From Iphione sp. A-MEVVRFRX5 (Eukaryota), in the NCBI GenBank assembly GCA_976226885.1, contig OZ320321.1:15066001-15130000 (forward strand): DNA of 64,000 nucleotides, read 5' to 3'. The position numbers and the translations under genes are program-made. The stretch's first letter is position 1; each line of letters starts with the position of its first letter. Shown in pieces: positions 37,640 through 63,840 of this stretch. Below the pieces are notes generated by a model. It saw nothing but the letters and a program-made list of their open reading frames with translations, did no database searches and was not told where the DNA came from.

Positions 37640-38987
37640 CATAAATTGGTTTATCCTATATGCCAATTCACACAATATTATGCTATGTTACTAGAGGGCA
37701 GGTGGTAACCATTACAGATTAATCAGATGTATCACTACCATTAATAACTGCATGTTATGGAAGATCAAACCATGTCTTAAAGTCAGTAGCAGCTTTGGAA
37801 CTAACTACCGTTACAAATGCATGATGAACAGGCTGCTCATGATGGGAATGTCTGATGAATTGGGATTGCTCCCCAAGGCCAGATTCATGAAGGACAGTGC
37901 TTTATAAAAGGGATGATGTCAGCAGACTCAATATAGCTTACATTACCAGGAGGAAAAAGACAAAGGAAGGGAAGACAGCACAACTCATGACATGACTATT
38001 TCTTAAAATGACAGATGAGAAAAAACTCATCCTCAATGGCATGAGCTTGAATCTCTAGTTCTTTCAAGCACCCAATACATTCAATCTCATATACCAAGCC
38101 GCCGAAACACCACCTAACACTACTACTTCATCTTCAACTGAGACTATCATGGGTAGAACTTCAAAAACATAACAACTGAAACTGACTAAAGCTGTCCCCC
38201 AGGTTCCCTTTGTAAGAGTACAATAGAACATCATCACTTTTAAGACATTCACCTCAAATTACATGCCATTCAAGATGGATGGAGTCTCCAGACCAGATCA
38301 ATCCTTCCAACTTCACTGATAACCACATAGCCATGCCCTACACAACCTTGTTTGACACCCTCCCACCCTGGCATCAAGGAGAAGTCACAGCAATCGCTGA
38401 GGATGAGTTTAGGAGTGGTTATACATTTCCCATCTTTGATCTGAACAAAGAGAAGAGGAACTGGCCTCTCTCCATTGAAGTTGGGAAATACCAGATTCAC
38501 TGTAATGTTTGCTACAGCTCTGTCCACTACTGTCAAATTACTGGTTTATGGAACCTTCCTTGCCACGGTGAACATAGTCTTGGAATATAATGTAGAGCTG
38601 GTCACTTAACCACTGTGTGTACTGGACATGGACAATTTCCTGACTGGAAACCATTTTCATGTGGGAGTGGACCCTCCAACAAACAGCCCTGTGAATTCTT
38701 TAATTCATTGGAGACACCACTCCATCATTATCATCCATGACTTAATCATAGTCAATGCTACTGATAGTTATGTTCATGCTAATAGAAGAATACAAGGAAG
38801 TAATCCTGTCTGTGGTTATTATTGTCTTGATTATATTAACAAGAGAACAGACAGTATCTTACTGCAGTACTCTATCGAAAGTTACCATGTTAATGGACTG
38901 TATTTGAATGACCTAAATGTTGTTGAGGGAGTGATTAATATATATGTATGTGAGGATCCATCCATACCTGTAAAACTGCCTTCTTGA
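37640..38987 (+). mobile_element. Polinton/Maverick relic, copy A (major capsid with ~740-bp deletion; adenain-like protease 38628-38987)
   Basis: MCP-like pieces FGTNYRYKCMMNRLL..KARFMKDSAL and EDEFRSGYTFPIFDLNKE; protease-like IHW...DSY...RRIQGSNPVCGYYCLDYINKR. Confidence 0.75.
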
Positions 38988-39609
38988 GGTGTGCATTCAA
39001 TGATGAATAATATTTTGTCTTATATTATCTTATCTTATCTTGTGCAGGATTTGATTTTCATCTCTGTTTGCAGTATTAGGAAGATATTGTAGATTGATCA
39101 CCTGTCATGGAGAAAGAAAATGATGAAAAAGTGCTAATTCCTATATCAGTTATGTATATATACACATACAAAAGAAATTACAAAACATTTCATTTAATAT
39201 ATATGTCCATATAAGTATCATATATATGTTGTCACAACGTATTGTTATTGTAACCAAGCAACTTATGTATGTATGCATGTCTACGTCTTGTATCTACACA
39301 CTCTGCTTTGAAAATTTTACTTACAAAAGAAATTACGACACATTTCATTAAATATATATATATATATATATGTATATATCAATGTAAGCAAAGGTTACAT
39401 CAATAAATGCTCTAGATGATACTTCTGTGTTTATGTGTTTTCCACTGGAAGACAGAAATAAATGCATACAGTTGGTGGATTCACTTACATTAGATGTTGA
39501 AACATTTTTTCAGTTGGATTCTCCAATGGGGGTCAAAAAATGAAATAAAAATTATGGAGGTATCAAATCATTACTTTCATGTTACTATAACCATTTTGTA
39601 AAACATCAA

Positions 39610-39970
39610 CCACCTGCTCCATCCCAAGCTCCATCACACGCTTCACCACATAATCCACCACACAGTTCACCACAAGCTCCGCAACATGCTTTACTACATG
39701 CACCATATGCTAACCACATGTTTCAAAACATGCTCCAACACTTTTCTCCACCACATGCTGTACCATAATATTATGCTTCACCACATACTCCACCATATGC
39801 AACACATCCTCCAACTCATGCTCCACCAAATACTTAACCACATGCTCCACCACATGCTGCACCATATGCAAAAGCATATGCACTACATTCTCCAACACAT
39901 GCTCCACCATGTGCGCTACCACATGCTTTGCCACATGCTCCCCTACACAGACCACATGCTCTACCACATG
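39610..39970 (+). repeat. Degenerate 12-bp CCACCACATGCT repeat (PPHA / HHML frames), copy A
   Basis: Low-complexity array; longer copy at ~49855-50270 and truncated copy at ~63720-63835. Confidence 0.85.
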
Positions 39971-41815
39971 GGAATGGAAATTGATTGGTTTGTAGACTAC
40001 TTACAGAGTTGTGGGCACAGAGTTAGGGTAATTGGGTCTCTGTATTCTGTTAAGACTGTAAAATGTGGGGTACTTTTTGCTTTATTCTCTCATTTAATGC
40101 TTTTAAAATACTACACATTTCAATAATATTTGATCTCACACCTGCCAAGGAAGCTGTCCAGTGTTGTTGATGTTCGGCAGGTATCTGGTTGATTTTTCAC
40201 TTACTGCAACTGTTTTCAAATGTTTCTACTCACTTGACCTTTAGGCATTCACAAAACTACCCAGGATGCATTACCTCTATAAACTATACTTTTAGTCTTA
40301 TGCATTACTAATTGAAATAATTCTTTTAGTAATACATGAACATATCATGAAGGCATAAGACAAGGGCATCAGATAATGCATGATGTCACCCCCTCTCATA
40401 GTGAATATAGCCATTGATTCTTGGTAACTGTACAGACTAAATTTAATGGATGGACCTTTGTTTGAAGGTCCCAATACTAAAGTCCTCCCACCCCAAGGGC
40501 ATTTTATCCCATGGTCGGCTACCCTGGTAATTCAGTGTATTGGAGATATTATTTGTATAGAGCAAGGATGGCAAATGAACCTATGCAAGATGAAGTGAAA
40601 ACATAATTCTACATAGTTCCACATAATGTTACCACTTTATTACTATTAACTAGGTCTTTCTGACTGTATTGATCAATTTTGCAGCTATCACTTCTCATCT
40701 ACCATGAACTAGCTAGTCATCTACATTCTAATGAGTTGGCTGCTGATGCAATACACTTGCCATGTTTAGAGTAACAACTGTTGGTAGAGCTATTTCTGTG
40801 AAATATGATGCATCATATGTGTACAGGTAGGTACAAGAATTACACAGTTATTCATGATTAACAATCAGGTGATAAATTCTAGAATATAATACTGACATCA
40901 GAAAAAATGATGAGTAGATAAATATATACATAACTGCTAGGCATGATAGCAACACACAAGATTAGATAGCAGTTGTGATTAAGACAATACCTGTTACATA
41001 GCAAGAGCCCCCTCAGGGTGAGAAACATCGGTAAAGTGCTACATGCTCTACAATAAAAGAAGAGAGGGCTGACCTACCTGTAATATCTAGAGTTGGAGAC
41101 CCCTAGGGCTCCTGAACTAAGACAGACTAACCGCCTACTATACCATATTTCTATAAATTGCTGACAGCAAAGAAACTTATTATTCTGCAATTCATTGATA
41201 AATTATTTACTTTGATAGGATTAGATAATCAAAATGTCAAAAAAAATACATTTACAAGCATATTTACATGAAGTAGCATGTGCAGTTTATCAATACTGTA
41301 AGACCCCACTTTGACAAAAGGAATGAACTCAGTAATGGGTGCAGCAATGGGCTATGCTGCTGTCTAAATATGAACTGTGAGAGTCAATAACTGATACAAA
41401 TGTTTGACAGGATATTAGCTAGATTTTGAGCCAATACACTGATGATTTGGTTCAATCTGCTTGTTCAAACTTGTGAGTTCTTCTAGAAGACAACCGAGCT
41501 AGCCATTGACAGTTGGTTAAGTTGTGCCTGCATATATGTCACTCATGGAGTTTTGATGGGTTCTGCCTAATAATTCAAATTGCTGTCTTCATTTTTTCAG
41601 TTTTTAGCATCTGACTGAAGAACTTACATTTGTAGAAAGGACTTGGATTTCATTAGTTATCCTTACGCTGGTTCATGTGTAATATGCACAACAACAAGTA
41701 TAATTTGATTGATATCTTTAGACAAAAATGATTCACACATCCTTTCTATAAACATCTTTTTTTAAATAGTGGATGATCCATTCTCTTAACAATTCCAAGC
41801 AGCATACCTGCTAAT

Positions 41816-43126
41816 ATGAAATTAATTCAAGTCAAAAAGACTTATTTTTTCATAATATTCAAACTGATCACCTTGTTGTCACTTTGTTTTATATGTATAA
41901 TTACTTGGACAGTTACAAGAAAAATCTCCCTGCAGCCTTCAGTGCATGTCCATGTAGAATTACCTGAATTGAAAAAGGAAAGTATAAGTTGTTCCAAATT
42001 ATTTGATGGGGATGAAAAGGAGATTTTAAGGGCAGAACAACTGAGGAATAGTAAAAAGTTTTTTCCATCTGATTTGACCGTGTATAGACTAGCAAGGAAC
42101 TGTTCTGCTTTGCGGACACTGGGATATGCAAGCAGACCTCTCTCATCAGAGGAAGAGTCTTATCCAATTGCATTTGTTATATTGATGCATGAAAAAACAT
42201 TTCAGGCAGAAAGGCTTTTACGTCTGCTTTACCAACCACAGAATTACTACTGCTTACACATTGACCGAAAAGCTAAAAGAGAAGTACACCTTGCAATGGG
42301 AGCTATAGCAGCTTGTTTTCCAAATGTGTTTCTGTCATCTAAATTAGAAACTGTTATTTATGAACATTTTAGTTCACTCCAGGGTGATCTCAACTGCATG
42401 TCTGACTTAATAAAAAGGGCAAGTGATTGGAAATATCTGATTAATTTAGCAAGTAGTGTTCTGCCTCTCAAGACAAATCTAGAGATGGTTAAAGTGATGA
42501 AGATCTACAATGGAGCAAATGATATTGAAGGAAAGTCAAGTTATGCATTGCCAAAATATTCTTATAGACATAAATCCTATTATGTATGGCTTTTTGGCTG
42601 GGCTGTACCTATATACAAAAAATCTCCTCCTCCTTTTGGTATCAAGATCCAGCATGGTAGTACCTATGGGATATTCAGTCGCCAATATATAGAATTTATT
42701 TTCCATGATAAGCGGGCAAGAGCTCTATTAGAGTGGCTTAAGCACTGTTATGCACCTGATGAACAGTTCTTCACCAGCCTCCATCACTTGGAAAACAATG
42801 CAGACTTGCACACTCCAGGTGGTTATTATGGTGACCCAGGTAAGAAGGAATATTTGGCCAGTCATTCTGTGTGGCGTAATAAATACAACACTTGTGGTGG
42901 GAAATGGTCAAAACACCACATTTGTTTATTTGGTACAAGAGACTTGCACCATCTGGCAAAAAGGAAGGAATTCTTTGCAAACAAATTTGATCCAGAGTTT
43001 GATGACATTCCAGAAATGTGCATTAGTGAATGGCTTGCTAACAAGACAGCTGGAAAAAGTGCAATGATAGATTTGTCATTTTATAGAAATCTGAAGTTTG
43101 TATTTCCTACAAAGTCCAGTGTTTAA
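41816..43126 (+). CDS. Core-2/I-branching beta-1,6-N-acetylglucosaminyltransferase-like (GT14/GCNT family), copy A, 436 aa, single coding exon
   Basis: Type II N-terminal TM anchor; motifs YPIAF, RLLRLLYQPQNYYCLHID, DLNCMSDL, WKYLINL..PLKTNLEMV, PDEQFF (catalytic Glu316), C..G..D, FANKFD. Confidence 0.95.
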   Translation: MKLIQVKKTYFFIIFKLITLLSLCFICIITWTVTRKISLQPSVHVHVELPELKKESISCSKLFDGDEKEILRAEQLRNSKKFFPSDLTVYRLARNCSALRTLGYASRPLSSEEESYPIAFVILMHEKTFQAERLLRLLYQPQNYYCLHIDRKAKREVHLAMGAIAACFPNVFLSSKLETVIYEHFSSLQGDLNCMSDLIKRASDWKYLINLASSVLPLKTNLEMVKVMKIYNGANDIEGKSSYALPKYSYRHKSYYVWLFGWAVPIYKKSPPPFGIKIQHGSTYGIFSRQYIEFIFHDKRARALLEWLKHCYAPDEQFFTSLHHLENNADLHTPGGYYGDPGKKEYLASHSVWRNKYNTCGGKWSKHHICLFGTRDLHHLAKRKEFFANKFDPEFDDIPEMCISEWLANKTAGKSAMIDLSFYRNLKFVFPTKSSV

Positions 43127-44229
43127 CTTTAATATCTATTGTTTATGTATGTAGTATAGCTGAATTGAATAACTAGTACTGGTGTAGATTTTTGTGCATT
43201 CATATCATATGATAGATCATTTCTTTGCTTTGTGACTGTGACATGTTTCCCTGGATGTCTGACATAAATGATAGTATTTATGTACCTTATTCTTTAAAAT
43301 CATTTGGTACTGCATTCTTTTACTGTGCCATCTTGTAGTACACAGCTGAAACAGAATAATGAATGACTATGAGCTATTTGAGCATCCTTTTCATCCCCCC
43401 CCCTCCCCTTTACCAGTCAAACTTGATTGGATAGTGCGGGTAACTAATGGCAGCTGTGAATTTAGATGTGTAAACTTAAGGTAACCACTAGGAGAGATTT
43501 ATTTGTATGTCATATATATATGCTTATCAGCATTCTGTATTTACCATTATGGATCTTCATGATGACCCTCTTCTTAGGCAGTAACAGAACAATTTATTCA
43601 TGAAACAATTCATATTGTATGGTGAACATTGGATCAAAAATTGCAAAACTGTGTTCCTTGAGAGCTCACTAGAAACAAAATTAGATGAAAATAGTGTTTC
43701 AACCCTTAGAATTTTAATCAGCACTCAATGCATTGTGGCAACTACAGGCAGGTTGTGGCTATTGCAAGACTGCAATTAGGCAAATTTACATAACTTACTC
43801 TGCTGACTCCAAGTCTAGCTCAAGAATCCAAGCCATACAATTGCTAGCTAATAAATTTATGACTGTATGCTGCTAACTCTACTCTTGAGAACTGTATCTA
43901 TATTCTCTAAATAAAAAGATAAAGAAAATATATGATTTGTCAAGACTCCTTCACTAAAACAATACATTCTTTTCAGTAACATGGTTTGTCTTGAAAGGTA
44001 TCAAGTCTCTTCCATTTTCCTTTCTCTCTTTTTCTCTCCTCTCTTGGTTTTTCCTTCTTTCTGTCTTTCTTTCTTTCTCTCTCCCTTTGCTTTCTTTGTG
44101 TAGTCATGTTTTCTCTATTGATGAAGATCAGTTAATCCTTGAGGTGGACCTAAATAGCTCACAAAATCAAGTTTTTCTGTGCAAGAATTGGATTTATTTA
44201 AAATGCTGGGCATGGCTCTGTGTCTGACT

Positions 44230-45720
44230 CTTCTATGATCAGAGCAGAGTCAGGAAATGAGGGCTTTAGCCACAAGATGTCTTATGTCTTCTCTGTGCAG
44301 AAGTCTCTGATGTTCTTGAACACATACTATTGTCTCTTGGTGGACAAACCAGGGGAAGGAACAGGTAGGGGGGATTGGTTCTTGGGGAAAGCTTGGGGAT
44401 AATTCTTTGAAAGTGTGTGGCTGGCTGTCTGCATACTGGTGGAAGGAATTAACCCTAGCATTCTGGTCTGAGAACTCAAAATGATGATGCTGCTTAATAC
44501 TTTGCAAATGCTGGACAAAAGATGTATAGAAACTTTTTCAGTCATATGATGGCACTTCAACTTTTCCTAGCTCATTGCCAATGACTTAGGGAATGTTTAC
44601 CTGACCCTGGGTACTCTTCAGTACTGTCTGAGATAACTCTGATAGGCTAAAGACAGGCTCCTACCAAAACTTCAGTTTCAGCAAACCAAACCACCAGTCA
44701 GGGGCAAACTTCATGTGGCTAGTAAAAAGAAAGTTAAAGGGGATTGTTCTGTGATCACCAGTCAGGACCCTCCACATGAGAACAGCTAGCACATAATTGT
44801 TCTTATTTTAGCCACTGCAGTTGGCACAGTGCAGATCAACAGAGTATGGCCCAAGATCAAACTTAGGAGATGAGAGGCATTGGCTTCCTTACTGCCACAG
44901 TGTCCCTCATCTATGAGAGAGTTGACTTGCTTGGTTATAGTCTCATTACACATTCCAAAGATGTCCACTTTTTGCAAGCTAGGAAATACAGTGGACCTGG
45001 CTGCATTTGGAAAGAGGGCAGGTGGACCTGCTGGGTATAGTAAAAACTGATGTGGGTAGCTATGTTGACAGACCAGGGTGGGTGTTGACCAAGGGTAGGG
45101 GACTTCCCGGTAGGCAGCCTTAACACTCTTCACCATATTCTGATAAAATGTCTTTTGCCCTGTTACTGCCTCCAGATGTCTCTATTGTCTCTTTAGTATT
45201 GCCACCTTGTCTACCTCAGGGAGATTACTAGATGAGGAAATGTTCCTGAAGTTACAGTGACACTCCCAATACAGGTCAGTCCTGGGGCAGGAACAAACTA
45301 TACAGGGGAGAAATTGCAGCCACAGGTTCCAGAAAGTAGAGTCTGCTAAACACCTATACTGAGACTTCTCTATGGCTGCACAATACAGTTTGTAGATATA
45401 GGCCTTGATTGCAGATGAGGGGAGGAGGAAAATGTCATCTTGTTTGTGGGTAACTACATGTCAGAGGGTACAAGGTCGTTGGTCTCTGCATATGAAGTGA
45501 TGAACCCTATAACTCTCTCAACATCAGCGACATGGGGTGTGTGCTGCCAGCCCTCTTAACATGGGGGACAATGCCGTTGTCCTTATACCATTGTATAATG
45601 TTGGCAATATTGTTCAGGCTGATGCTGGAAGGTAAACTGAAACACCCTTAACATCTAACCAAGAGAGGAAGGCAATCTATGCAGTTAGGTTGTAACGTCT
45701 AATTTGTGGGTGGTTACATA
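44230..45720 (-). pseudogene. Decayed DUF7869-like DDE/D transposase (Sola/Zator-like; superfamily uncertain), copy A
   Basis: Frameshifted pieces WYKDNGIVP, DVERVIGFITSYAE, DIFLLPSS, STFWNLW..PRTDLYWEC, HISFYYTQQVHLPSFQMQPGPLYF, QVNSLIDEG..GSKE, LHCANCSG, IKQHHHF, PGLSTKRQ*YVFKNIRDFC. Confidence 0.7.
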
Positions 45721-46709
45721 ATCCAAATTCATGACTACTCTGACATACTTATCTATTTACCCATACTGTTATCACTATAAATGCCTGTAAGTTACATTCA
45801 TATGGCACCTGGAAGGAAATAAAAGTACAAAGATGAATGATACTCATGCATACATTAATTTAAAGGTGTCCCTATAGATGGCCTTGGAACCAACCATGTA
45901 GTGGCTGCATGGAACAGGTCTCTCATGTTTCCCCTTCTCCCCCTTCTTCCACATTGATGTCATGGCACTAATATCAGTGACAGTGCTTATTATGCCTTGC
46001 AGTAGCATGTCCTTCTCCCCCAGAAATGATGGGTATACATGAGATCCATTAGACATGGATAGGATTGACATGGGAATGTTTTTTTTGCATGAGTGAAACT
46101 GACAACTTGACAATAATGTTCAGCAGACATCAAATTAAAGTGATCTTCTGAGCTACACATCTTTACTAAAATTTGTATAATGGTTGCTGCTAGTCTTAAT
46201 AAGCATTACAATAAGTTTGGGGAACAATAAGTACCTGAGGACAGCTGAAAAACTTCCTGCCATCACTCAGCCAACTCAGTCACCATGATCTGTTTACTGC
46301 AGCTGTCATCATTATACTGCTTGCAAGAACACCTACATCAAATGTTCACATAATTAGTTTCCCAGGGTTTGAGAAATTCTAAAATAGCCTGAAATACAAA
46401 TAAAATAATGGTGAAAAGCTATTCTAACATGTTCATGAGATACTTCAGAATGTCCATGAGGATTTACAAATACAGAGGTGATGTTTGACCTATTGTCAAA
46501 GGTGGACCCTCTGTCAGAGATATCGGTTAGGGTCATGGTAGGCCTTATGTCAAAGGTAGACCTTATGTCAAAGGTAGATGTCAAAGGAAGGCCTCTTTCT
46601 AAGGGTACCTTCCTGCAAAGGCTGGATCCACCTTTTGAGCCAGGGCTGGCATGAATTCCTAAAGTGGGGAAATTTTGAAGAGATGTGTGTAAGAGTTGGT
46701 AACTTAACA

Positions 46710-49238
46710 CTTGTCATAAATTGGTTTATCTCTTATGCCAATTTATACATATTCATGCTATCTCACTAGAGGTCAGGTGGTAGCCATTACAGTACAAACA
46801 GATGTATCAATGCCATTAACAACTGTATGGTATTGTAACATGTCGATCATCGTCAGGCCGGATGGCCACCGCGAAATAAAGAACTTCCACACAGAATATG
46901 CGTTGTTGCTCTCACTTCCAAGTCCGGATGAGAACTGTCTTTATTCAGGAAATCAGTGCCCTTATATACAGAGTCTGGCTCTAAAATTAGCCATGGTACA
47001 GTCTTAAAAATAGTAACACCCTCCCCCAGAGATCTTTCTGGAGGGGTGCTTCTGGAACCTTCCATAGTACATACTACCTTTCTCTCCAGAATCCTTCTGG
47101 AGAGATCCTCTCTAGAACCTTCCGAGCTATGCTCAGTACACACGTACTCCCTCCTAGGGGAGTTTCTAGAATGTTCTTCCCACCCCACGCCACCGGTGGC
47201 TGTCTCGGAGGACTATCCTCCGAATACCCTTTCGGAGGAAACACTCTCAATGCGCATTTTGTTCATACCAAACACCGAAACGCTACAGTATGGTAGATCA
47301 AACCATGGACAGGGAAACCTGATTCTTGTCCTAGACTTTGCAGTGAGCTGATTGTGTGCAAAGGTCATGGCATAAATCATGTCTTGGTCATCCAAGACCA
47401 TAAGATGTAGTTGAAGCTTCAGTAGATCTTTATTTCATGACTGTGCAGAAGACAATTCAGGGGCTTAAGTATCAAGGTCCTCCTCCAGTGGGATGAAGTG
47501 ATCTGAGAGTCACAGTGGTACTGTGCCCGTTTCCTGTCTCAGGACTAAATGTATCCAAGACACAGAGGATCAGATGGTAGGTTGTAGCTATTGTTTACAG
47601 GACACATCCACTTCCATAGAGGTTGTTGGCATATGGGGGCAGTGCAAGCATCGCAGGACACCAGTATCCCTGTTTGTCCTGGCCAAGGTACATAATGCTA
47701 AAGGACATAGTTGGAAGATTACCACACACATGTATGCACCAGAAAGGTTAATTATTCAGCTAAGCCGCTATTTTGGTTCATTAACATTTTTCCATTAGCA
47801 TTACATTTGAGATCACTCTGTTAAATTTGACCATACTAGGGGCCCATTCCTAAGCCCAGGTCGATGTCCACACAAGCAAATGCAGGGTTTTAGCAACAGT
47901 AATACTAAACACTTGACATATCTGGACACAGTGTCTTGGATTTTAAGGTTCCAAATGATTCACTCCAATGAATCAGAGTGAACACAATTTGGTGGAGCTT
48001 TAGATCCTCACTGAAAAAGGAGTGGAATTTTCCTTCCAACAGACCATAGTCAGTATCGGCTTTGGAGCTAGCTACTGTTACAAATGCATGATCAACACAC
48101 TGCTCATGACAGCAATGTCGGATGAATTGGGATTGCTCCCCAAGGCCAGATTCATGAAGGGCATTGCTTTGTAAAAGGGATGATGTCAGCAGACTCCATA
48201 TAGCTTACATTACCAGGAGGAAAAAGACAAAGGAAGGGAAGACAGCACAACCCATGACATGACTATTTCTTAAAATGACAGATCAGAAAAGACTCATCCT
48301 CAATGGCATGAGCTAGTTCTTTAAAGCACCTAATACAATCAATATCATATACCAAGCCGCTGAAACACCACCTAACACTACTACTTCATCTTCACCTGAG
48401 ACTATCATGGGCAGAACTTCAAAAACATAATAACTGAAACTTACTAAAACTGCCCCCCAGGTTCCCTTTGTGAGAGTACAATAGAACATCATCACTTTTA
48501 AGCCATTCACCACAAATTACATGGCATTCAAGGTGGATGGAGTCTCCAGACCAGGTCAATCCTTCACTGATGACCACATAGCCATGTCCTGCACAGCCTT
48601 GTTTGACACCCTCCCACCCTGGCATCAAGGAGAAGTCACAGCAATCGCTGAGGATGAGTTTAGGAGTGGTTACACATTTCCCATCTTTGATCTGAACAAA
48701 GAGAAGAGGAACTGGCCTCTCTCCATTGAAGTTGGGAAATACCAGACTCACTGTAAAGTTTGCTACAGCTCTGTCCACCACTGTCAAATTACTGGTTTAT
48801 GGAACCTTCCTTGCCATGGTGAACATAGTCTTGGCATATAATGTAGAGCTGGTCACTTAACCACTGTGTGTACTGGACATGGACAATTTCCTGACTGGAA
48901 ACCATTTTCATGTGGGAGTGGACTCTCCAACAAACAGTCCTGTGAATTCTTTAATTCATTGGAGACACCACTCCATCATTATCATCTATGACTTAATCAT
49001 AGTCAATGCTACTGATAGTTATGTTCATGCTAATAGAAGAATACAAGGAAGTAATCCTGTCTGTGGTTATTATTGTCTTGATTATATTAACAAGAGAACA
49101 GACAGTATCTTACTGCAGTACTCTATCGAAAGTTACCATGTTAATGGACTGTATTTGAATGACCTAAATGTTGTTGAGGGAGTGATTAATATATATGTAT
49201 GTGAGGATCCATCCATACCTGTAAAACTGCCTTCTTGA
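46710..49238 (+). mobile_element. Polinton/Maverick relic, copy B (possible penton tail, major capsid ~47520-48850, adenain-like protease 48879-49238)
   Basis: TSTSIEVVGIW; QKRLILNGMS; FKPFTTNYMAFKVDGVSRP; AEDEFRSGYTFPIFDL; LSIEV; protease H/Q/C motifs. Multiple stops and frameshifts. Confidence 0.8.
46834..47287. mobile_element. 454-bp solo LTR
   Basis: TGTAACA...CGCTACA termini (TG..CA); 4-bp TSD GTAT at 46830-33 and 47288-91; empty site AACTGTATG-GTAT-GGTAGATC in the paralogous copy at ~61420-61440. Confidence 0.9.
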
Positions 49239-50270: not shown

Positions 50271-50274
50271 CAAA

Positions 50275-53984: not shown

Positions 53985-56069
53985 ATGGAGTATTCCTCCG
54001 ACACTGACTCTGAAGATGATATATGCCTCTCTAAGTTAAGACTGAGGGAGGAAGGCATAGGAGAAGACACAGATGCTGAATATATTGAAGAATCCACAGA
54101 TTCTGATGAGGATGAACCCATTGCAGATCTTGTCCTTCTATCAAGACAAAGAGAAAACCAAGAAGATCCAGTTTCTGATGAGGAAACAGAAGAGGAGGGG
54201 GAAGTTTCATGGCAAAAGGTACCTATGGGTACAGAATATGTGGAGAAGACACCCTTTGATGACTCAGAGACAGGAATCAATGAGGATATGAAGGTTGGCA
54301 AGGACAGCAAAGCCATACAATTTTTGCAGCTGTTCCTAACAACATCCCTGTTCACACACATTATGAACATGACCAACCTATATGCCTCTACCCACAGAGA
54401 GGAGGAACCAGAGAAACACAAGATGAATTGGCAACCAGTGGACCCTCATGACCTGTCTGGATTTTTTGGACTTGCCTTCATAGTGGGTTTGGTGAAGAAA
54501 CCTCAAATCAAAGACTACTGGTCTACACTTTTGGCCATAGCTACACCGGTGTTTGGGACAATGATGAAGAGAGACCGGTTTTGTCAGATTTTAAGGTATG
54601 TAGGCCTATACAACTATATAGATATTTATTCAAATATTTTGGATCGATTTAAGCTATGGTGCTTTCAGTTGAATGCATACTGGTATTATGGTCATCTATA
54701 CATTTCACAACTTTCCTATTTCATATTTCAAGTATCTCTGTGCATATGACCCTGCCAAAGTCCCAGGAAAAGATGATCCGGCTAACACCCCTACATGGAA
54801 AGTACAACACCTGGTGTCTGAGTTCAACAAGGCTGCCACTGCTACCTATACACCAAGGAGAGAATTGGCTGTTGATGAGTCTATGGTAGGATTCAAGGGC
54901 AGGATGAAAATGAAGCAGTATATGCCAAGGAAGCGTTCAAAGTGGGGCCTGAAGTGCTGGTGCCTGGCAGAATCAGCTACCGGTTAGTAATGATCTTGAT
55001 ATGACCACCATTATATTTTTTCATGTCTGTAAAATAGAAAATGGTTCAACCAGAATGATCATATTTAGAAATGAATTTATTTCAGAACGAAATTTATTTA
55101 TTTTCTCAATAGTCAGACTCTCTATTGTACATCTCTTCAGGATACATCCTGCAACTTGAACCCTACCATGGAAGAGAGGACCGTGGCCAGACTGGATTAG
55201 CAGAATTTGTGGTTGTACAACTGATGAAGACAGCTAGGTTGCGAGGAAAGGGATTCATTGTATTTCTAGACAATTTTTATACATTAGTGACTCTTCTCCA
55301 GAAACTGTCAAATTTCAACACTCTAGCATGTGGGACAGTGAGAAAGTCTAGGAAGCTGCTACCCAAAAACCTCATGACATCTAATCCTCCTGGACTGGGC
55401 ACAGGCAGAGGGTCAGTTATTTTCAGGAAATTAGGAGAAATCATTCTGACTCTTTGGAGGGACAAGGAGGTAGTTGGTGTCCTGTCAACTGCTCATGGCA
55501 CCACTATGGGAGAGACCACCAGGCTAATGAAAAACAAGGAGACTGGTCGGTTTGAGAGAACAATTGTCCCCTACCCTGACTCTGTAAAGGCATACACCAA
55601 GTGGATGGGTGGGTTAGACCTTGCCGATCAGCTAAAAGGGTATTACTATTTCAGTAGGAAAACAAAAAAATGGAATATAAAATCCTTTTGGCATCTGGTT
55701 GAAGTTTGCAAAGTAAATGCCAATATTTTGATGAACAAATTCCAGAAGAAACCTCAATCACTGCACAAATTTACCCTCTTACTGATTGATTGTCTACTGC
55801 AGAATGCCAATCCACCCCAGGTGACCAGGCCCCTCCCCCTAGCATTGTCCGACAACCGGTTGACCTCCAGGTGTTTACCCACTGCATATGATAGGAGGAG
55901 TGTTTGCAGAGTGTGCTATCATAGGCAAAAGAAGGGACTGATAGAGCGTGCTAGCCAGACTAAATATGGCTGTGACACCTGTCATGTGCACCTATGCATT
56001 CCTGTGTGTTTCAGGGCTTACCACACACAGAAGGATTTTGTCAATCATCCACTATGTAATGAAGCATAA
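53985..56069 (+). CDS. piggyBac transposase (PGBD4-like), 3 exons, ~597 aa
   Basis: Exons 53985-54599 (or 54595), 54733-54982, 55141-56069. Acidic N-terminus; DYWS, MKRDRF..IL, VDESM, KWGLK, LDNFY, GTVR, YTKWMGGLDLADQ; C-terminal CRD CRVC..CDTC..HLC..CF..YH. TATAAAA at 53831, AATAAA at 56096. Confidence 0.9.
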
Positions 56070-56479
56070 GCATGAAATGCACAAGAAGGAGATGCAATAA
56101 AATGTTCAAACTTACCTCTGTGTACTGCATTACAACTCCTTCTAGAGTAAATCCACTTATTAAATTGATCACAATATCCTGGCATAATCCACTGTCAGCA
56201 TAGCCATCCATGGTGAAATCAATTCATAGTGATAATCCATTTATAGTGGTAATCCATTTGTTCATGGTAATCCATATGTGATAATCCATGCACAGGAGTG
56301 GACATCATAATCTCAAGAGATGTGATGATACATGGAGTAAAAAATTAAAAACCTTGCCTCTCATGATATATTACTATCAGGTTTCAGACATGCCTCATTC
56401 AGTAAAGACTCAGTTTAAAAATAATCTACTGGACCATTTCCTCAAGAATACCATTGTGAATATGCACATAAAAAGATTA

Positions 56480-57560
56480 TGGAAGAAATTCAGTGTAAAT
56501 GTCTGTAAAAAAATCTTCAAATTTCTAGTTGGGGTTAGCCTATTCTGTGCATATATCCAGTGCGAAAAGAGCAATCCAGGGAGAAAACATTTCAGTCTGA
56601 CTCCAAAATTTACTTATTTCAATGCAAAATATTATTATGCTACCCAGAATTTGAACTGAATTTGTGTCTGAGAACAATCTGGTAGTCATAAATTTGGAAA
56701 TACTAAAACATAGTCACCATGAGTATGATTATCATATTAGGATGTTTTTTGTCTATTCTGTGCATAAGTCCAGTGTCCAGTCCAACCTAAGCAGTCCAGG
56801 GAGAAAACACCTCGATTTGGCTACAAAAATAAGTTATTTACATACACAATATGCTCGTTCCACCCAGAAAATCCATATTTTACTAAGGTGAGCCTAATTT
56901 CTGCCTAACAATTAATATCATATTCATAAACTATGATTCACTAAACACTCAACAGTATGATGCCTTTCCCCATTCTGTTCATATATCTAGTGCCAGCTTT
57001 GCCATCCAGGGAGAAAACAATAGCATTTGTCTTCAAAAAACAGTTAAATCCATGCAAAATGTGCTCATGCTACTCGAAATTCCATATTTTAATAATGCAA
57101 ACTGAGTTTCTGTCTGACAATTGCTCTCCTATTCATAAATTTTGAAATACTACCACATCATGTTATGACGTTTCTCTCCATTCTATTCATATATCCAGTG
57201 CCAGCTTAGCTATCCAGAGAGAAATATTTCGATTTGACTCCAATAATCACTCATATCCATGCAAAACATACTCATCCTATGCAAAATATCCATAATTTAC
57301 TCAAGTGAACTGAGTTTCTGTCTGACAATTGCTCTGCTTTTCATAAACTATGATTTACGAAACAATAGTGACAGTATGACGTTGTTAGTCTATTCTGTCC
57401 ATAGTTCAGTGCCAGCTACCCAGGGAGAAAACACCTCGATTTGACTCCAAAAATTAGTTAATTCAAAGGAAAATACCTTCATGCAATCCACAATATCCAC
57501 ATTTTACTAATATGAACTGAATTCCTGTCTGACAATGATCCTGGTAATCATAAACTCTAA
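56480..57560 (+). repeat. ~210-bp diverged tandem repeat (about 5 units) inside the piggyBac 3' region
   Basis: Anchor CCAG(G/A)GAGAAAA recurs at ~56577, ~56797, ~57006, ~57214, ~57420, most followed by TTTG(A/G)CT(C/A)CAA. Confidence 0.8.
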
Positions 57561-58809
57561 TTTACTAATGACAAGCCCAACCACAAGGACGAAAAGTCCG
57601 TTATGACGTTGCACACAGCACGCCCTCTATGGGAATATGCATGTAATACCCCTGCGCCGCCTGACGACTTGAAGTGCTACTACCCTTCGCGCCGTCAAAG
57701 GGTTAACTTTAATATCTATTGTTTATGTATGTAGTATAGCTGAATTGAATAACTAGAACTGGTGTAGATTTTTGTGCATTCATATCATATGATAGATCAT
57801 TTCTTTGCTTTGTGACTGTGACATGTTTTCCTGGATGTCTGACATAAATGATAGTATTTATGTACCTTATTCGTTAAAATCATTTGGTACTGCATTCTTT
57901 TACTGTGTCATCTTGTAGTACACAGCTGAAACAGAATAATGAATGACTATGAGCTGTTTGAGCATCCTTTTTATCCCCCCTCCCCTTTACCAGTCAAACT
58001 TGATTGGATAGTGCGGGTAACTAATGGCAGCTGTGAATTTAGATGTGTAAACTTAAGGTAACCACTAGGAGAGATTTATTTGTATGTCATATATATATGC
58101 TTATCAGCATTCTGTATTTACCATTATGGATCTTCATGATGACCCTCTTCTTAGGCAGTAACAGAACAATTTATTCATGAAACAATTCATATTGTATGGT
58201 GAACATTGGATCAAAAATTGCAAAACTGTGTTCCTTGAGAGCTCACTATAAACAAAATTAGATAAAAATAGTGTTTCAACCCTTAGAATTTTAATCAGCA
58301 GTCAATGCATTGTGGCAACTACAGGCAGGTTGTGGCTATTGCAAGACTGCAATGAGGCAAATTTACATAACTTACTCTGCTGACTCCAAGTCTAGCTCAA
58401 GAATCCAAGCCATACAATTGCTGGCTAATAAACCTATGACTGTTTGCTGCTAACTCTACTCTTGAGAACTGTATCTATATTCTCTAAATAAAAAGATAAT
58501 AAGGAAAATATGTGATTTGTCAAGACTCCTTCACTAAAACAATACATTCTTTTCAGTAACATGGTTTGTCTTGAAAGGTATCAAGTCTCTTCCTTTTTTC
58601 TTTCTCTCTTTTTCTCTCCTCTCTCGGTTTTTCCTTCTTTCTGTCTTTCTTTCTTTCTCTCTCCCTTTGCTTTTTTTGTGTAGTCATGTTTTCTCTATTG
58701 ATGAAGATCAGTTAATCCTTGAGGTGGACCTAAATAGCTCACAAAATCAAGTTTTTCTGTGCAAGAATTAGATTTATTTAAAATGCTGGGCATGGCTCTG
58801 TGTCTGACT

Positions 58810-60320
58810 CTTCTATGATCAGAGCAGAGTCAGGAAATGAGGGCTTTAGCCACAAGATGTCTTTTGTCTCCTCTGTGCAGAAGTCTCTGATGTTCTTGAA
58901 CACATACTATTGTCTCTTGGTGGACAAACCAGGGGAAGGAACAGGTAGGGGGGATTGGTTCTTGGGGAAAGCTTGGGGATAATTCTTTGAAAGTGTGTGG
59001 CTGGCTGTCTGCATACTGGTGGAAGGAATTAACCCTAGCATTCTGGTCTGAGAACTCAAAATGATGATGCTGCTTAATACTTTGCAAATGCTGGACAAAA
59101 GATGTATAGAAACTTTGTCAGTCATATGATGGCACTTCAACTTTTCCTAGCTCATTGCCAATGACTTAGGGAATGTTTACCTGACCCTAGGTACTCTTCA
59201 GTACTGTCTGAGATAACTCTGATAGGCTAAAGACAGGCTCCTACCAAAACTTCAGTTTCAGCAAACCAAACCACCAGTCAGGGGCAAACTTCATGTGGCT
59301 AGTAAAAAGAAAGTTAAAGGGGATTGTTCTGTGATCACCAGTCAGGACCCTCCACATGAGAACAGCTAGCACATAATTGTTCTTATTTTAGCCACTGCAG
59401 TTGGCACAGTGCAGATCAACAGAGTATGGCCCAAGATCAAACTTCTCAAAATAGTGATGCAGATAGGAGATGAGGGCATTGGTTTCCTTACTGCCACAGT
59501 GTCCCTCATCTATGAGAGAGTTGACTTGCTTGATTATAGTCTCATTACACATTCCAAAGATGTCCACTTTTTGCAAGCTAGGAAATACAGTGGACCTGAC
59601 TGCATTTGGAAAGAGGGCAGGTGGACCTGCTGGGTATAGTAAAAACTGATGTGAGTAGCTATGTCAACAGACCAGGGTGGGTGTTGACCAAGGGTAGGGG
59701 ACTTCCCAGTAGGCAGCCTTGACATTCTTCACCATATTCTGATAAAATGTCTTTTGCCCTGTTACTGCCTCCAGATGTCTCTATTGTCTCTTTAGTATTG
59801 CCACCTTGTCTACCTCAGGGAGATTACTAGATGAGGAAATGTTCCTGAAGTTACAGTGACATTCCCAATACAGGTCAGTCCTGGGGCAGGAACAAACTAT
59901 ACGGGGGAGAAATTGCAGCCACAGGTTCCAGAAAGTAGAGTCTGCTAAACACCTATACTGAGACTTCTCTATGGCTGCACAATACAGTTTGTAGATATAG
60001 GCCTTGATTGCAGATGAGGGGAGGAGGAAAATGTCATCTTGTTTGTGGGTAACTACATGCCAGAGGGTACAAGGTCGTTGGTCTCTGCATATGAAGTGAT
60101 GAACCCTATAACTCTCTCAACATCAGCGACGTGGGGTGTGTGCTGCCAGCCCTCTTAACATGGGGGACAACGCCGTTGTCCTTATACCATTGTATAATGT
60201 TGGCAATATTGATCAGGCTGATGCTGGAAGGTAAACTGAAACACCCTTAACATCTAACCAAGAGAGGAAGGCCATCTATGCAGTTAGGTTGTAATGTCTA
60301 ATTTGTGGGTGGTTACATAA
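58810..60320 (-). pseudogene. Decayed DUF7869-like transposase, copy B
   Basis: Paralog of 44230-45720; retains ISYLHHYFEKFDLG, which a 20-bp deletion removes in copy A. Confidence 0.7.
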
Positions 60321-61309
60321 TCCAAATTCATCACTACTCTGACATACTTATCTATTTACCCATACTGTTATCACTATAAATGCCTGAAAATTACATTCAT
60401 ATGGCACCTGGAAGGAAATAAAAGTACAAAGATGAATGATACTCATGCATACATTAATTTAAAGGTGTCCCTATAGATGGCCTTGGAACCAACCATGTAG
60501 TGGCTGCATGGAACAGGTCTCTCATGTTTCCCCTTCTCCCCCTTCTTCCACATTGATGTCATGGCACTAATGTCAGTGACAGTGCTTATTATGCCTTGCA
60601 GTAGCATGTCCTTCTCCTCCAGAAATAATGGGTATACGTGAGATCCATTAGACATGGATAGGATTGACATGGGAATGTTTTTTTTGCATGAGTGAAACTG
60701 ACAACTTGACAATAATGTTCAGCAGACATCAAATTAAAGTGATCTTCTGAGCTACACATCTTTACTAAAATTTGTATAATGGTTGCTGCTAGTCTTAATA
60801 AGCATTACAATAAGTTTGGGGAACAATAAGTACCTGAGGACAGCTGAAAAACTTCCTGCCATCACTCAGCCAACTCAGTCACCATGATCTGTTTACTGCA
60901 GCTGTCATCATTATACTGCTTGCAAGAACACCTACATCAAATGTTCACATAATTAGTTTCCCAGGGTTTGAGAAATTCTAAAATAGCCTGAAATACAAAT
61001 AAAATAATGGTGAAAAGCTATTCTAACATGTTCATGAGATACTTCAGAATGTCCATGAGGATTTACAAATACAGAGGTGATGTTTGACCTATTGTCAAAG
61101 GTGGACCCTCTGTCAGAGATATCGGTTAGGGTCATGGTAGGCCTTATGTCAAAGGTAGACCTTATGTCAAAGGTAGATGTCAAAGGAAGGCCTCTTTCTA
61201 AGGGTACCTTCCTGCAAAGGCTGGATCCACCTTTTGAGCCAGGGCTGGCATGAATTCCTAAAGTGGGGAAATTTTGAAGAGATGTGTGTAAGAGTTTGTA
61301 ACTTAACAC

Positions 61310-63330
61310 TTGTCATAAATTGGTTTATCCCTTATGCCAATTTATACATAATTATGCTATCTCACTAGAGGTCAGGTGGTAGCCATTACAGTACAATCAG
61401 ATGTATCAATGCCATTAACAACTGTATGGTATGGTAGATCAAACCATGGACAGGGAAACCTGATTCTTGTCCTAGACTTTGCAGTGAGCTGATTGTGTGC
61501 AAAGGTCACGGCATAAATCGTGTCTTGGTCATCCAAGACCATAAGATGTAGTTGAAGCTTCAGTAGATCTTTATTTCATGACTGTGCAGAAGACAATTCA
61601 GGGGCTTAAGCGTCAAGGTCCTCCTCCAGTGGGATGAAGTGATCTGAGAGTCACAGTGGTACTGTGCCCGTTTCCTGTCTCAGGACTAAATGTATCCAAG
61701 ACACAGAGGATCAGATGGTAGGTTGTAGCTGTTGTTTACAGGACACATCCACTTCCATAGAGGTTGTTGACATATGGGGGCAGTGCAAGCATCGCAGGAC
61801 ACCAGTATCCCTGTTTGTCCTGGCCAAGGTACATAATGCTAAAGGACATAGTTGGAAGATTACCACACACATGTATGCACCAGAAAGGTTAATTATTCAG
61901 CTAAGCTGCTACTTGGGTTCATTAACATTTTTCCATTAACATTACATTTGAGATCACTCCGGTAAATTTGACCATACTAGGGGCCCTATTTCCAAGCCAA
62001 AGTGGATGTCCACACAAGCATATGCAGGGCTTTAGCACCAGTAATACTAAACACTTGACATATCTGGACACAGTGTTTTGGAGCTTAGGGTTCCAAATGA
62101 TTCACTCCAATAAATCAGAGTGAACACAATTTGGTGGAGCTTCAGACCCTCAGTGAAAAAGGAGTGGAATTTTCCTTCCAACAGACCATAGTCAGTAGCA
62201 GCTTTGGAGCTAACTACTGTTACAAATGCGTGATCAACACATTGCTCATGACAGGAATGTCTGATGAATTGGGATTGCTCTCCAAGGCCATATTCATGAA
62301 GGACAGTGCTTTATAAAAGTGATGATGTCAGCAGACTCAATATAGCTTACATTACCATGAGGAAAAAGACAAAGGAATGGAAGACAGCACAACTCATGAC
62401 ATGACTATTTCTTAAAATAACCGATCAGAAAAGACTCCTCCTCAATGGCAAGAGCTTGAATCTCTAGTTCTTTCAAGCACCTTATACATTCAATCTCATA
62501 TACCAAGCCGCTGAAACACCACCTAACACTACCACTTCATCTTCACCTGAGACTATTATGGATAGAACTTCAAAAATATAACAACTGAAACTAACTAATG
62601 CTGTCCCCTAGGTTCCCTTTGTGAGAGTACAATAAAACATCATCACTTTTAAGCCATTCACCACAAACTACATGCCACTCAAGGTGGATGGAGTCTCCAG
62701 ACCAGATCAATCCTTCCAACTTCATTGATGACCACATAGCCATGCCCTACACAGCCTTGTTTGACACCCTCCCATGCTGGCATCAAGGAGAAGTCCCAGG
62801 AATCACTGAGGATGAGTTTGGGAGTGGTTCCCATCTTTGATCTGAACAAAGAGAAGAGGAACTGGCCTCTCTCCATTGAAGTTGGGAAACACCAGACTCA
62901 CTGTAATTTTGCCATAGCTCTGTCCACCACTGTCACATTACTGCTGTATGGAACCTTTCCTGCTATGGCGAACATAGTCTTGGCATATATTGTAGAGCTG
63001 GTCACTTAACTACTCTGTGCACTGGAGAGAGACAATTTCCTGACTGGAAATCATTTATATGTGGGAGTGGACTCTCCAACCACTACATCATTATCATCCA
63101 CAACTTAATAATAGTAACTTATAGTTATGTTCATGCTAATAGAAGAATACAAGGAAGTAATCCTGTCTGTGGATATTATTGTCTTGTTTGTATTAACAAA
63201 AGAACAGAGAGTATCTTACTGCAGTACTATATAGAAAGCTACTGTATTGATGAACTGTATTTGTATGATACAGTTGTAGATAGGGTGATTAATATATAAA
63301 GGTGAGGATTCATCCATACCTGTAAAACCA
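61310..63330 (+). mobile_element. Polinton/Maverick relic, copy C (more diverged; protease disrupted)
   Basis: Colinear with 46710-49238 minus the solo LTR; ~97% to ~61950, then ~88-90% with private deletions (estimates by eye). Confidence 0.75.
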
Positions 63331-63840
63331 CCTCATTGAGGCGTGCATTGGATGATTAATGATATTATTTCTGATCTTGTGTAGGATTTGATGTTCATCT
63401 CTGTATGCATTATTAGGAAGATATTGTAGACCTGTCATGGAGAAATAAGTGATGGAAAAGTGCTATTACATTATCATTTATGTACATGGACATACAAAGA
63501 TAATTACGAAACATTTAATCAAATATATATAATATCAATGTAAGCCAAGATTATATCAATAAATGTTCTAGATGATACATACAGTTGGTCCATTCACTTA
63601 CATTAGATGTTGAAAACATTTTTTCAGTTGGATTCTCCAGTGCTGGTTAAAAAATGAAATAAAAATTATGGAGGTTTTAAATCATTACTTTCATGTCCCT
63701 ATGACCATTTTGTAAAAGATCAACCACCTGCTCCACCCCAAGCTCCATCACATGCTTCACCACATAATCCACCACAGATTTCACCACAAGCTCCACCACA
63801 TGCTATACTACATGCACCATATGCTTACCATGTTTCAAAA

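What the first reader, a model, noticed from the sequence alone, without database searches (positions are those of the whole stretch)
37640..63840. Glycosyltransferase amplification unit bounded by endogenous Polinton/adintovirus capsid fossils
The order is relic A - GT14 - relic B - GT14 - relic C. The recent high-identity duplication begins and ends inside the capsid relic (switches near 38350/48610 and 47800/61950). This is what unequal crossover between older paralogous viral fossils would produce. The host gene appears to have been amplified by recombination through decayed virion genes rather than by transposition, so copy number may vary among individuals.
Basis: partly seen in the sequence, partly recalled or inferred. 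Interest (0 to 1): 0.75.

Follow-up and report, generated by a model that had tools for sequence, protein, structure and literature searches.

The report
Tandem GT14 repeat carrying capsid fossil
A roughly 10-kb stretch of an invertebrate genome holding an intact glycosyltransferase gene and a long-dead virus capsid gene fragment is repeated head to tail. The dead capsid gene is real, but it looks like a passenger of an ordinary tandem gene array, not the proven cause of the amplification.

Summary
There is a head-to-tail array: U1 37635-46709, U2 46710-61308, and the start of U3 at 61309-63840. It carries two intact 436-aa GT14 (Pfam Branch) genes and three copies of a broken capsid gene.

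The relics align over about 270 codons, at about 40% identity, to a 463-aa protein of the unnamed 'F54H12.2-like' family. An AlphaFold model of that protein (pLDDT 85) matches double jelly-roll major capsid proteins (PBCV-1, Sputnik, mavirus, adintovirus/adomavirus-type).

- The array edge (37635/46710/61309) lies upstream of the relic, so 'bounded by fossils' is a choice of phase.
- All three relics share 4 stops and 2 frameshifts, so one dead fragment was copied along with host DNA.
- The 0.84 kb between the switches holds three equally distant lineages (about 7%). One crossover between two fossils cannot give this.

At least three old copies and two exchanges (or one long conversion) are needed. 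The protease call stays weak. Haplotype mis-assembly is not excluded. This is an ordinary tandem-array history and of modest interest.

The parts
37635..46709 (+). Array unit U1. It lacks 741 bp near its start compared with U2 and U3.
   Evidence: 37635-37774 matches 46710-46833 (84%) and 61309-61448 (86%). Homology starts sharply at about 37633-37635, and nothing to the left matches the units.
46710..61308 (+). Array unit U2. It holds two private insertions, a solo LTR and a piggyBac-type element.
61309..63840 (+). Start of array unit U3. Homology to U1 and U2 ends at 63840 inside the 12-mer satellite; the last 160 bases of the window are unrelated.
37782..38594 (+). Capsid relic A: a broken double jelly-roll major capsid gene matching residues about 110-459 of the 463-aa relative P0005. 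It has 3 frameshifts, 4 in-frame stops, 1-2 deletions of 10 aa or more, and its 5' part is deleted.
   Evidence: (score 331 against 29-41 for the controls).
47918..48848 (+). Capsid relic B, matching residues about 42-56 (weakly) and 101-459 of P0005. It has 2 frameshifts, 5 in-frame stops and 1-2 deletions of 10 aa or more.
62060..62985 (+). Capsid relic C, matching residues about 42-460 of its relatives. It has 5-6 frameshifts, 5-6 in-frame stops and 2-3 deletions of 10 aa or more.
38628..38987 (+). Possible clan-CE (Ulp1/adenain-like) cysteine protease piece in copy A, a 119-aa open frame. The evidence is weak.
   Evidence: It is 99% identical to copy B. Copy B gave only an E 0.69 match to the ASFV S273R protease around its catalytic Cys. 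There was no Pfam hit and no word-search hit, and the AlphaFold model failed.
48879..49238 (+). Possible clan-CE cysteine protease piece in copy B.
63020..63330 (+). Counterpart of the protease-like piece in copy C. It is placed by DNA alignment only, its bounds are approximate, and it is no longer one open frame.
47766..48597 (.). The 'old patch' in U2. Here all three copies are about 7% apart (A 37781-38349, C 61907-62755). It spans the 5' margin and roughly the first three quarters of the capsid relic.
38349..47766 (.). Young block, copy 1, about 1.7% from copy 2. It holds the capsid 3' end, protease-like piece, satellite, RT scrap, GT14 and downstream DNA, and crosses the U1/U2 unit junction.
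48597..61907 (.). Young block, copy 2, which includes the private piggyBac-type insertion.
39609..39970 (.). 12-mer satellite in U1. It is longer in U2 (about 49852-50428), and a remnant lies in U3 at 63716-63804.
50249..50539 (+). Scrap of a reverse-transcriptase gene (RVT_1) in U2. Its U1 counterpart lies at about 39968-40105 by alignment.
41816..43126 (+). GT14 gene copy 1: an intact single 436-aa ORF of a core-2/I-branching beta-1,6-GlcNAc-transferase-like protein.
52284..53594 (+). GT14 gene copy 2: an intact 436-aa ORF with 16 aa differences from copy 1. Its stop codon overlaps the TTAA target of the piggyBac-type insertion.
53595..57702 (+). piggyBac-type transposon private to U2, with TTAA duplication and CCC..GGG inverted ends. 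Its transposase reading frame is split into two ORFs, and it carries an internal tandem repeat of about 208 bp.
46834..47287 (.). Solo LTR private to U2, with TG..CA ends and a 4-bp GTAT target duplication. The empty site is seen in U3.

Best explanation
This is a head-to-tail array of a host segment of about 10.3 kb.

Contents of a unit, in order: about 0.6 kb of unannotated DNA; a dead fragment of a Polinton/Maverick-type major capsid gene (plus a possible protease scrap); a 12-mer satellite; a reverse-transcriptase scrap; an intact intronless GT14 (GCNT-like) gene; and about 3.6 kb of downstream DNA.

Shown:
- The capsid fragment was already broken before it was copied, so the three relics are passengers duplicated with the host DNA.
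- The array has at least two age layers. The old layer is 7-15% divergent and has at least three lineages of the relic-bearing stretch. The young layer, about 1.7% divergent, is one 9.4-kb block that includes GT14.
- The young block ends at 38349/48597, inside the capsid relic, and at 47766/61907, at the relic's 5' margin.

Inferred:
- The young layer arose by homologous exchange between misaligned units. The route was either two successive unequal crossovers (one adding a unit, one removing a unit) or one long conversion-like replacement. Either would leave a 0.84-kb unexchanged patch.
- The relic served only as ordinary homologous DNA.
- Both GT14 copies are probably functional. Copy 2's 3' end is separated from its original downstream DNA by a transposon.
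For: Array and zones:
- Array structure.
- Change points: (likelihood-ratio statistic about 32 each).
- Three equally long branches in the patch (A 18, B 21, C 22 private sites) with randomly interleaved patterns (runs test P = 0.6).
- Past 48597 almost all variable sites are private to C.

Capsid identity:
- The big search found one true relative, P0005, at 46% over 57 aa.
- P0005 has 202 relatives of 410-470 aa, several named 'F54H12.2-like' in bivalves.
- Model pLDDT 85, pTM 0.85.
- Foldseek hits to PBCV-1 Vp54, Sputnik, iridovirus, faustovirus and mavirus capsid proteins at E 1e-16 to 1e-12.
- Foldseek hits to a bracovirus-borne protein (27% identity, E 2e-29), adomavirus LO7, and Adintovirus and MELD virus proteins.
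- Frameshift-aware alignment scores of 266-331 against 29-41 for controls.

Shared lesions: 4 stops and 2 frameshifts common to A, B and C.

GT14:
- Pfam Branch.
- Nearest named kin are GCNT1/3-like proteins of Lingula, bivalves and gastropods at 41-45% identity.
- 27 nt and 16 aa differences between the copies, dN/dS 0.40.

Post-duplication private insertions with target duplications.
Against: - Only 2.2 units are visible. U3's homology stops at 63840, so a third full unit and a third GT14 are not shown. The old layer could be just short relic-bearing repeats flanking one gene.
- Both ends of the young block fall in or next to the relic. The rough chance is about 0.02 if both must fall in the 1.5-kb viral stretch plus margin, and about 0.16 for two random points lying within 0.84 kb of each other. 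Some special role for the relic is therefore not excluded.
- Old divergence is uneven (about 15% at the unit start, 7% in the patch, 10% after it). The simple layering does not explain this.
- A conversion tract of 9.4 kb would be unusually long.
- No read data were available, so assembly error is not excluded.
Confidence: 0.55

Rival explanations
1. Two old relic-bearing direct repeats (A, and C at 61309-63840) flanked a single GT14. One unequal crossover between them made the hybrid relic B and the second GT14. Later a gene-conversion tract of about 0.8 kb, from a further paralogue outside the window, overwrote the capsid part of B or C.
For: - U3's homology ends at 63840, so C may be only a 2.5-kb repeat.
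- B matches C on its left and A on its right.
- 0.84 kb is a typical conversion-tract length (established knowledge).
- The patch lies almost wholly within the capsid relic. This is where a dispersed copy of the same element family would share homology.
Against: - No donor copy is present in the window.
- The model needs an unseen third lineage that is equidistant from A and C.
- It does not explain why A and C are closer in the patch (about 7%) than on either side of it (10-15%).
Confidence: 0.25
2. This is an assembly artefact. Two haplotypes of one locus, about 1.7% apart, were stacked in tandem, so the second GT14 does not exist on any one chromosome.
For: - 1.7% divergence is within the heterozygosity common in marine invertebrates (established knowledge).
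- The private LTR and piggyBac-type insertions could be presence/absence polymorphisms.
- The host looks lophotrochozoan.
Against: A stacked-haplotype join predicts that B's patch is an allele of A's or C's, about 1-2% away. It is in fact about 7% from both and carries 21 private sites. Three distinct relic sequences therefore exist, which implies two intervals between them. The two GT14 copies differ at 16 residues with dN/dS 0.40, which is compatible with either view.
Confidence: 0.12
3. GT14 is not a host gene but cargo of the virus-like element, and the repeat reflects the element's own multiplication.
For: GT14 lies on the same strand as the capsid and protease pieces, 2.8 kb downstream of them.
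Against: - No polymerase, integrase or packaging ATPase match turned up among the open frames of 60 aa or more in the unit, or of 75 aa or more upstream.
- The units are head to tail with sharp host-type junctions.
- The viral genes were dead before copying, while GT14 stayed intact.
- The nearest relatives of GT14 are annotated animal GCNT genes.
Confidence: 0.03

Closest known systems
Tandem gene arrays that evolve by unequal crossing-over and gene conversion (non-allelic homologous recombination, concerted evolution)
   Same: Head-to-tail units in one orientation; a mosaic of young and old identity blocks; private transposon insertions after duplication; gene copies kept intact.
   Different: Only 2.2 units are visible. 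The unexchanged patch coincides with a viral gene fossil, which may be chance.
Rearrangements mediated by endogenous viral or transposon copies, for example recombination between HERV15 proviruses at the human AZFa region (own knowledge) and the Polinton-driven reshuffling of the eri-6/7 locus in C. elegans (PMC11414722)
   Same: Paralogous copies of a virus-derived sequence lie at the points where host DNA was exchanged.
   Different: In those cases independent insertions of the element supply the homology. Here the three relics are copies of one already dead fragment, and the surrounding host DNA offers as much or more homology.
Double jelly-roll major capsid proteins of Polintons/Mavericks, adintoviruses, virophages and Nucleocytoviricota (PMC11161782)
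   Same: The relatives of the relic fold as a double jelly roll, with TM 0.5-0.6 to solved capsid proteins.
   Different: There is no sequence-level hit to any Pfam, PHROG or PDB entry. The family carries only the automatic name 'F54H12.2-like'. In the window it is a 5'-truncated, multiply broken fragment without the other hallmark genes.
GCNT1/GCNT3-type core-2/I-branching beta-1,6-N-acetylglucosaminyltransferases (CAZy GT14)
   Same: Pfam Branch domain, about 430 aa, single coding exon, hydrophobic N-terminal anchor.
   Different: Only 41-45% identical to the nearest named proteins. The substrate is unknown.

Membership tests
Double jelly-roll major capsid protein (Polinton/Maverick-adintovirus type) | The relic is homologous to a protein family | tested here: met
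   about 270 codons at about 40% identity to P0005, score 266-331 against 29-41 for shuffled, reversed or other-DNA controls.
Double jelly-roll major capsid protein (Polinton/Maverick-adintovirus type) | The family has two consecutive jelly-roll domains matching solved capsid proteins | tested here: met
   (pLDDT 85, pTM 0.85). PBCV-1 Vp54, Sputnik, SGIV, faustovirus and mavirus capsid proteins at E 1e-16 to 1e-12, TM 0.5-0.6.
Double jelly-roll major capsid protein (Polinton/Maverick-adintovirus type) | The closest viral relatives are of the Polinton/adintovirus group rather than giant viruses | tested here: inconclusive
   the best hit is a Cotesia sesamiae bracovirus protein (27% identity, E 2e-29). 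A chromosomal Maverick is reported to have moved into that bracovirus (Dupuy 2011, seen only as a reference). Adomavirus LO7, Adintovirus sp. and MELD virus follow, at scores similar to giant-virus capsids. No phylogeny was made.
Polinton/Maverick element (features as listed in PMC11161782) | [quoted passage not shown] | tested here: not met
   no such Pfam match among 113 open frames (60 aa or more in the unit, 75 aa or more upstream). Shorter scraps were not scanned.
Polinton/Maverick element (features as listed in PMC11161782) | Retroviral-type (RVE) integrase | tested here: not met
   no match.
Polinton/Maverick element (features as listed in PMC11161782) | Ulp1-family cysteine protease | tested here: inconclusive
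   The only hit is E 0.69 to the ASFV S273R protease around its catalytic Cys. Pfam and the word search were blank and the model was unusable.
Polinton/Maverick element (features as listed in PMC11161782) | Packaging ATPase, minor capsid protein, terminal inverted repeats | not tested
   No Pfam match for an ATPase appeared. No profile for the minor capsid protein was at hand, and no search was made for terminal repeats. The relic is a fragment, so membership rests on the capsid gene alone.
GT14 / Branch glycosyltransferase | Branch domain above Pfam's cut-off in a full-length open frame | tested here: met
   (132.8 and 134.4 bits; cut-off 23.4); 98% coverage of a 441-aa Lingula GCNT3-like protein.
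GT14 / Branch glycosyltransferase | Enzymatic activity and substrate | not testable with these tools
   None.
Single unequal crossover (NAHR) between two flanking repeats | Direct repeats in the same orientation on both sides of the duplicated block | tested here: met
Single unequal crossover (NAHR) between two flanking repeats | The hybrid middle repeat has one switch point, matching one parent on each side | tested here: not met
   There are two switch points 0.84 kb apart, with a third, equally distant lineage between them.
Single unequal crossover (NAHR) between two flanking repeats | Copy-number alleles (one-copy and two-copy) in the population | not testable with these tools
   No reads or other individuals were available. 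Exact look-ups of both GT14 proteins found nothing.
piggyBac transposon | TTAA target duplication, short inverted ends, DDE_Tnp_1_7 transposase | tested here: met

The most novel reading that the evidence does not exclude
The dead capsid gene is not a neutral passenger but a preferred substrate for exchange. Dispersed copies of the same virus-like element family elsewhere in the genome would convert or recombine with the relics. This would explain why both ends of the young block, and the anomalous 0.84-kb patch, coincide with the capsid reading frame. Fossils of DNA viruses would then drive copy-number change of a host glycosylation gene.
Probability: 0.12. Interest if true: 0.55.

Novelty: new member of a known kind. 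Interest (0 to 1): 0.3.

Why it matters
If the array is real, a mucin-type branching glycosyltransferase gene has been duplicated recently in this lophotrochozoan and may vary in copy number. This is the usual raw material of gene-family expansion.

The case adds a DNA-virus fossil to the list of repeats found at exchange points. It does not show that the fossil caused the exchange.

One by-product is useful for annotation. The widespread, Pfam-less 'uncharacterized protein F54H12.2-like' proteins of invertebrate genomes are predicted here to be double jelly-roll major capsid proteins. Many such gene models are therefore probably endogenous virus genes.

Tried and rejected
- Pfam on ten ORFs of the relics and insertions gave nothing for the relic pieces.
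- PHROGs and PDB sequence searches of the capsid family were blank.
- The word search with the protease-like piece was blank. Its single-sequence AlphaFold model had pLDDT 37, so no fold search was run on it.
- Two longer family members (P0020, P0024) were checked for a fused protease and none was found.
- Four of the five hits of the big search were bacterial repeat proteins and were rejected as chance.
- Exact look-up of both GT14 proteins found nothing on record, so no other assembly or individual could be compared.
- The big representative search was used before the word search. The word search's length filter cannot see full-length kin of a 120-aa fragment.
- I first took 37781 as the array's left edge. 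A more sensitive BLAST moved it to 37635 and revealed the 741-bp deletion in U1.
- The Pfam NRF match upstream was not located among the ten longest frames.
- A patchy-repair mosaic as the origin of the old patch was rejected, because B has 21 private sites and the A-like and C-like sites are not in runs.
- Hypermutability of the patch was rejected, because old A-C divergence is lower there than in the flanks.

Full report
**1. What is there**

The window is AT-rich (about 40% GC) and strongly CpG-depleted (observed/expected 0.09-0.14). It has one N run at 6448-6576, which I did not touch.

A self-comparison shows a head-to-tail repeat on the + strand. With a more sensitive search and a three-way alignment, the units are U1 37635-46709, U2 46710-61308, and the start of U3 at 61309-63840. 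Homology of U1 to the other units begins sharply at about 37633-37635. Nothing further left in the window matches the units.

Differences between the units:
- U1 lacks 741 bp that U2 and U3 have between the first 140 bp of the unit and the capsid relic.
- U2 carries a solo LTR at 46834-47287, with TG..CA ends and a 4-bp GTAT duplication. The empty site is present in U3.
- U2 also carries a piggyBac-type element at 53595-57702, with TTAA duplication, CCC..GGG ends and DDE_Tnp_1_7 and zf-Tnp_2 matches. The empty site is present in U1.
- The 12-mer satellite differs in length between units.

**2. The host gene**

Each full unit has an intact 436-aa ORF (41816-43126 and 52284-53594) with a Pfam Branch (GT14) domain at E 2e-38 and 6e-39.

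The nearest named relatives are GCNT1/3-like beta-1,6-GlcNAc transferases of Lingula, bivalves, gastropods and octopus, at only 41-45% identity. The host is therefore probably a lophotrochozoan whose genome is not closely represented. Nothing suggests human sequence.

The two copies differ at 27 of 1308 bases and 16 residues, with dN/dS 0.40. That is mild evidence that at least one copy is under constraint. The piggyBac-type element sits on the TTAA that overlaps copy 2's stop codon, so copy 2 keeps its ORF but has lost contact with its original downstream DNA.

**3. The capsid claim**

No Pfam family matched the relic ORFs. The word search cannot see full-length kin of a 120-aa fragment, so I sent the best piece (38228-38587) to the representative search.

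- Of five hits, four were bacterial repeat proteins and one, P0005 (463 aa), was a true relative at 46% over 57 aa.
- P0005 has 202 relatives of about 410-470 aa. Where named, they are 'uncharacterized protein F54H12.2-like', in oysters and a pearl oyster.
- The family has no Pfam, PHROG or PDB sequence match.
- An AlphaFold2 model built on a 50-sequence alignment is confident (pLDDT 85, pTM 0.85).
- Foldseek places the model among double jelly-roll major capsid proteins: PBCV-1 Vp54, Sputnik, grouper iridovirus, faustovirus and mavirus, at E 1e-16 to 1e-12.
- Among predicted viral structures the best hit is a Cotesia sesamiae bracovirus protein (27% identity, E 2e-29). Adomavirus LO7, Adintovirus sp. 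and MELD virus proteins follow.

A profile of the family and a frameshift-aware alignment find the gene on the + strand in all three relics and nowhere else in the window: A 37782-38594, B 48022-48848, C 62161-62985. Each covers about 270 codons at about 40% identity to residues about 101/110-459 of P0005. Scores are 266-331, against 29-41 for shuffled or reversed protein or other DNA. A weak but colinear match to residues 42-56 lies at 47918-47962 in B and 62060-62104 in C, inside the 741 bp that A has lost.

Counts of lesions:

| Relic | Frameshifts | In-frame stops | Deletions of 10 aa or more |
|---|---|---|---|
| A | 3 | 4 | 1-2, plus the 5' deletion |
| B | 2 | 5 | 1-2 |
| C | 5-6 | 5-6 | 2-3 |

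Four stops and two frameshifts are shared by all three relics, so the gene was dead before it was copied.

**4. The protease claim**

The 119-aa open frame just downstream (38628-38987 and 48879-49238) has a Gln...Cys-Gly arrangement. Its only PDB hit is the clan-CE protease S273R of African swine fever virus, aligned at the catalytic Cys but at E 0.69. Pfam, PHROGs and the word search were blank, and a single-sequence model failed. I rate it as possible, not shown.

No polymerase, integrase or ATPase match was found among 113 open frames of the unit and the upstream 37 kb. The relic is therefore an isolated fragment, and the Polinton-versus-adintovirus label cannot be decided.

**5. The identity mosaic**

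Change points:
- U1 versus U2 is 7.3% apart from 48048 to 48597 and 1.4% after it (support 48592-48630, equal to 38349 in U1).
- U2 versus U3 is 1.3% apart from 47288 to 47766 and 7.9% after it (support 47737-47771, equal to 61907 in U3).

From 38381 to about 47700 the two units differ by about 1.7% throughout.

Between the two switches, at 47766-48597, the three copies form a star: 18, 21 and 22 private sites for A, B and C. The patterns are interleaved at random (runs test P = 0.6). Past 48597 nearly all variable sites are private to C, which is about 10% away. The first 140 bp of U1 are 14-16% from the others.

**6. What this means for the mechanism**

One unequal crossover between two old fossils would make B a clean hybrid, C-like up to one point and A-like after it. 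B instead carries its own old lineage over 0.84 kb.

- Patchy mismatch repair is excluded by B's private sites.
- Hypermutability is excluded, because old A-C divergence is lower in the patch than beside it.

At least three old copies of this stretch must therefore have existed.

Three histories fit. The first two are alternative routes of the same reading, and I prefer that reading to the third:
- Two successive unequal exchanges in an older array of three or more units.
- One long replacement of 9.4 kb.
- One crossover followed by a conversion of about 0.8 kb from a copy outside the window.

The array's own junction (46709|46710 and 61308|61309) lies about 1.2 kb upstream of the first detectable capsid residue in U2, or about 0.75 kb once the private solo LTR is set aside. 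The old homology also continues about 0.85 kb past the viral pieces. 'Bounded by fossils' is therefore a choice of phase in a tandem repeat.

Both ends of the young block do lie in or beside the relic. That is suggestive (rough chance 0.02-0.16, depending on how it is framed), but with two points it is not evidence of a special role.

Stacked haplotypes would also predict a clean hybrid, so the third lineage argues against that artefact. Only reads can exclude it.

**7. Comparison with what is known**

- Tandem arrays reshaped by unequal exchange are textbook.
- Exchange at copies of endogenous viruses or transposons is known. Examples are HERV15 at AZFa (own knowledge) and Polinton-driven rearrangement of eri-6/7 in C. 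elegans (PMC11414722).
- Polinton hallmark genes are as listed in PMC11161782.

This locus is a new example of a known kind.

Noticed in passing
P0005-P0124; model m8d3a56f8cc7b: The widespread, Pfam-less 'uncharacterized protein F54H12.2-like' proteins of bivalves and many metagenome or Logan contigs are predicted to be double jelly-roll major capsid proteins. A full-text search for 'F54H12.2' found no paper.
   Followed up: partly
window 53591-53594: The piggyBac-type element inserted at the TTAA that overlaps the stop codon of GT14 copy 2. The ORF is intact, but its original 3' flank now lies 4.1 kb away.
   Followed up: partly
window 56534-57568: Inside the piggyBac-type element there is a tandem repeat of about 208 bp, roughly 5 copies at 67-80% identity.
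   Followed up: no
window 63841-64000: U3's homology stops inside the satellite. It is followed by 160 bases rich in a repeated GGCCGA-type motif (16-mer repeat at 63856-63894). This could be the end of a transposon or the true right edge of the array.
   Followed up: partly
window 18797-19354 and 29673-30056: Two further tandem-repeat arrays outside the finding, with sub-repeats of about 52 bp and about 30-120 bp at 78-84% identity.
   Followed up: no
window 1-37780 (fragment not located): One open frame of 75 aa or more matches the Pfam NRF (nose resistant to fluoxetine, N-terminal) domain at E 2e-5, hinting at a multi-exon host gene upstream. Scanning the ten longest frames did not find it.
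   Followed up: partly
window 46886-46992 and 16985-17094: Part of the solo LTR matches a stretch at 16985-17094 on the opposite strand (77%), so a second, older copy of that LTR family is in the window.
   Followed up: no
window 39609-39970, 49852-50428, 63716-63804: The 12-mer satellite (ACCACATGCTCC-like) next to the relic has a different length in each unit. It reads as long His/Leu-rich open frames on both strands that are not genes.
   Followed up: no
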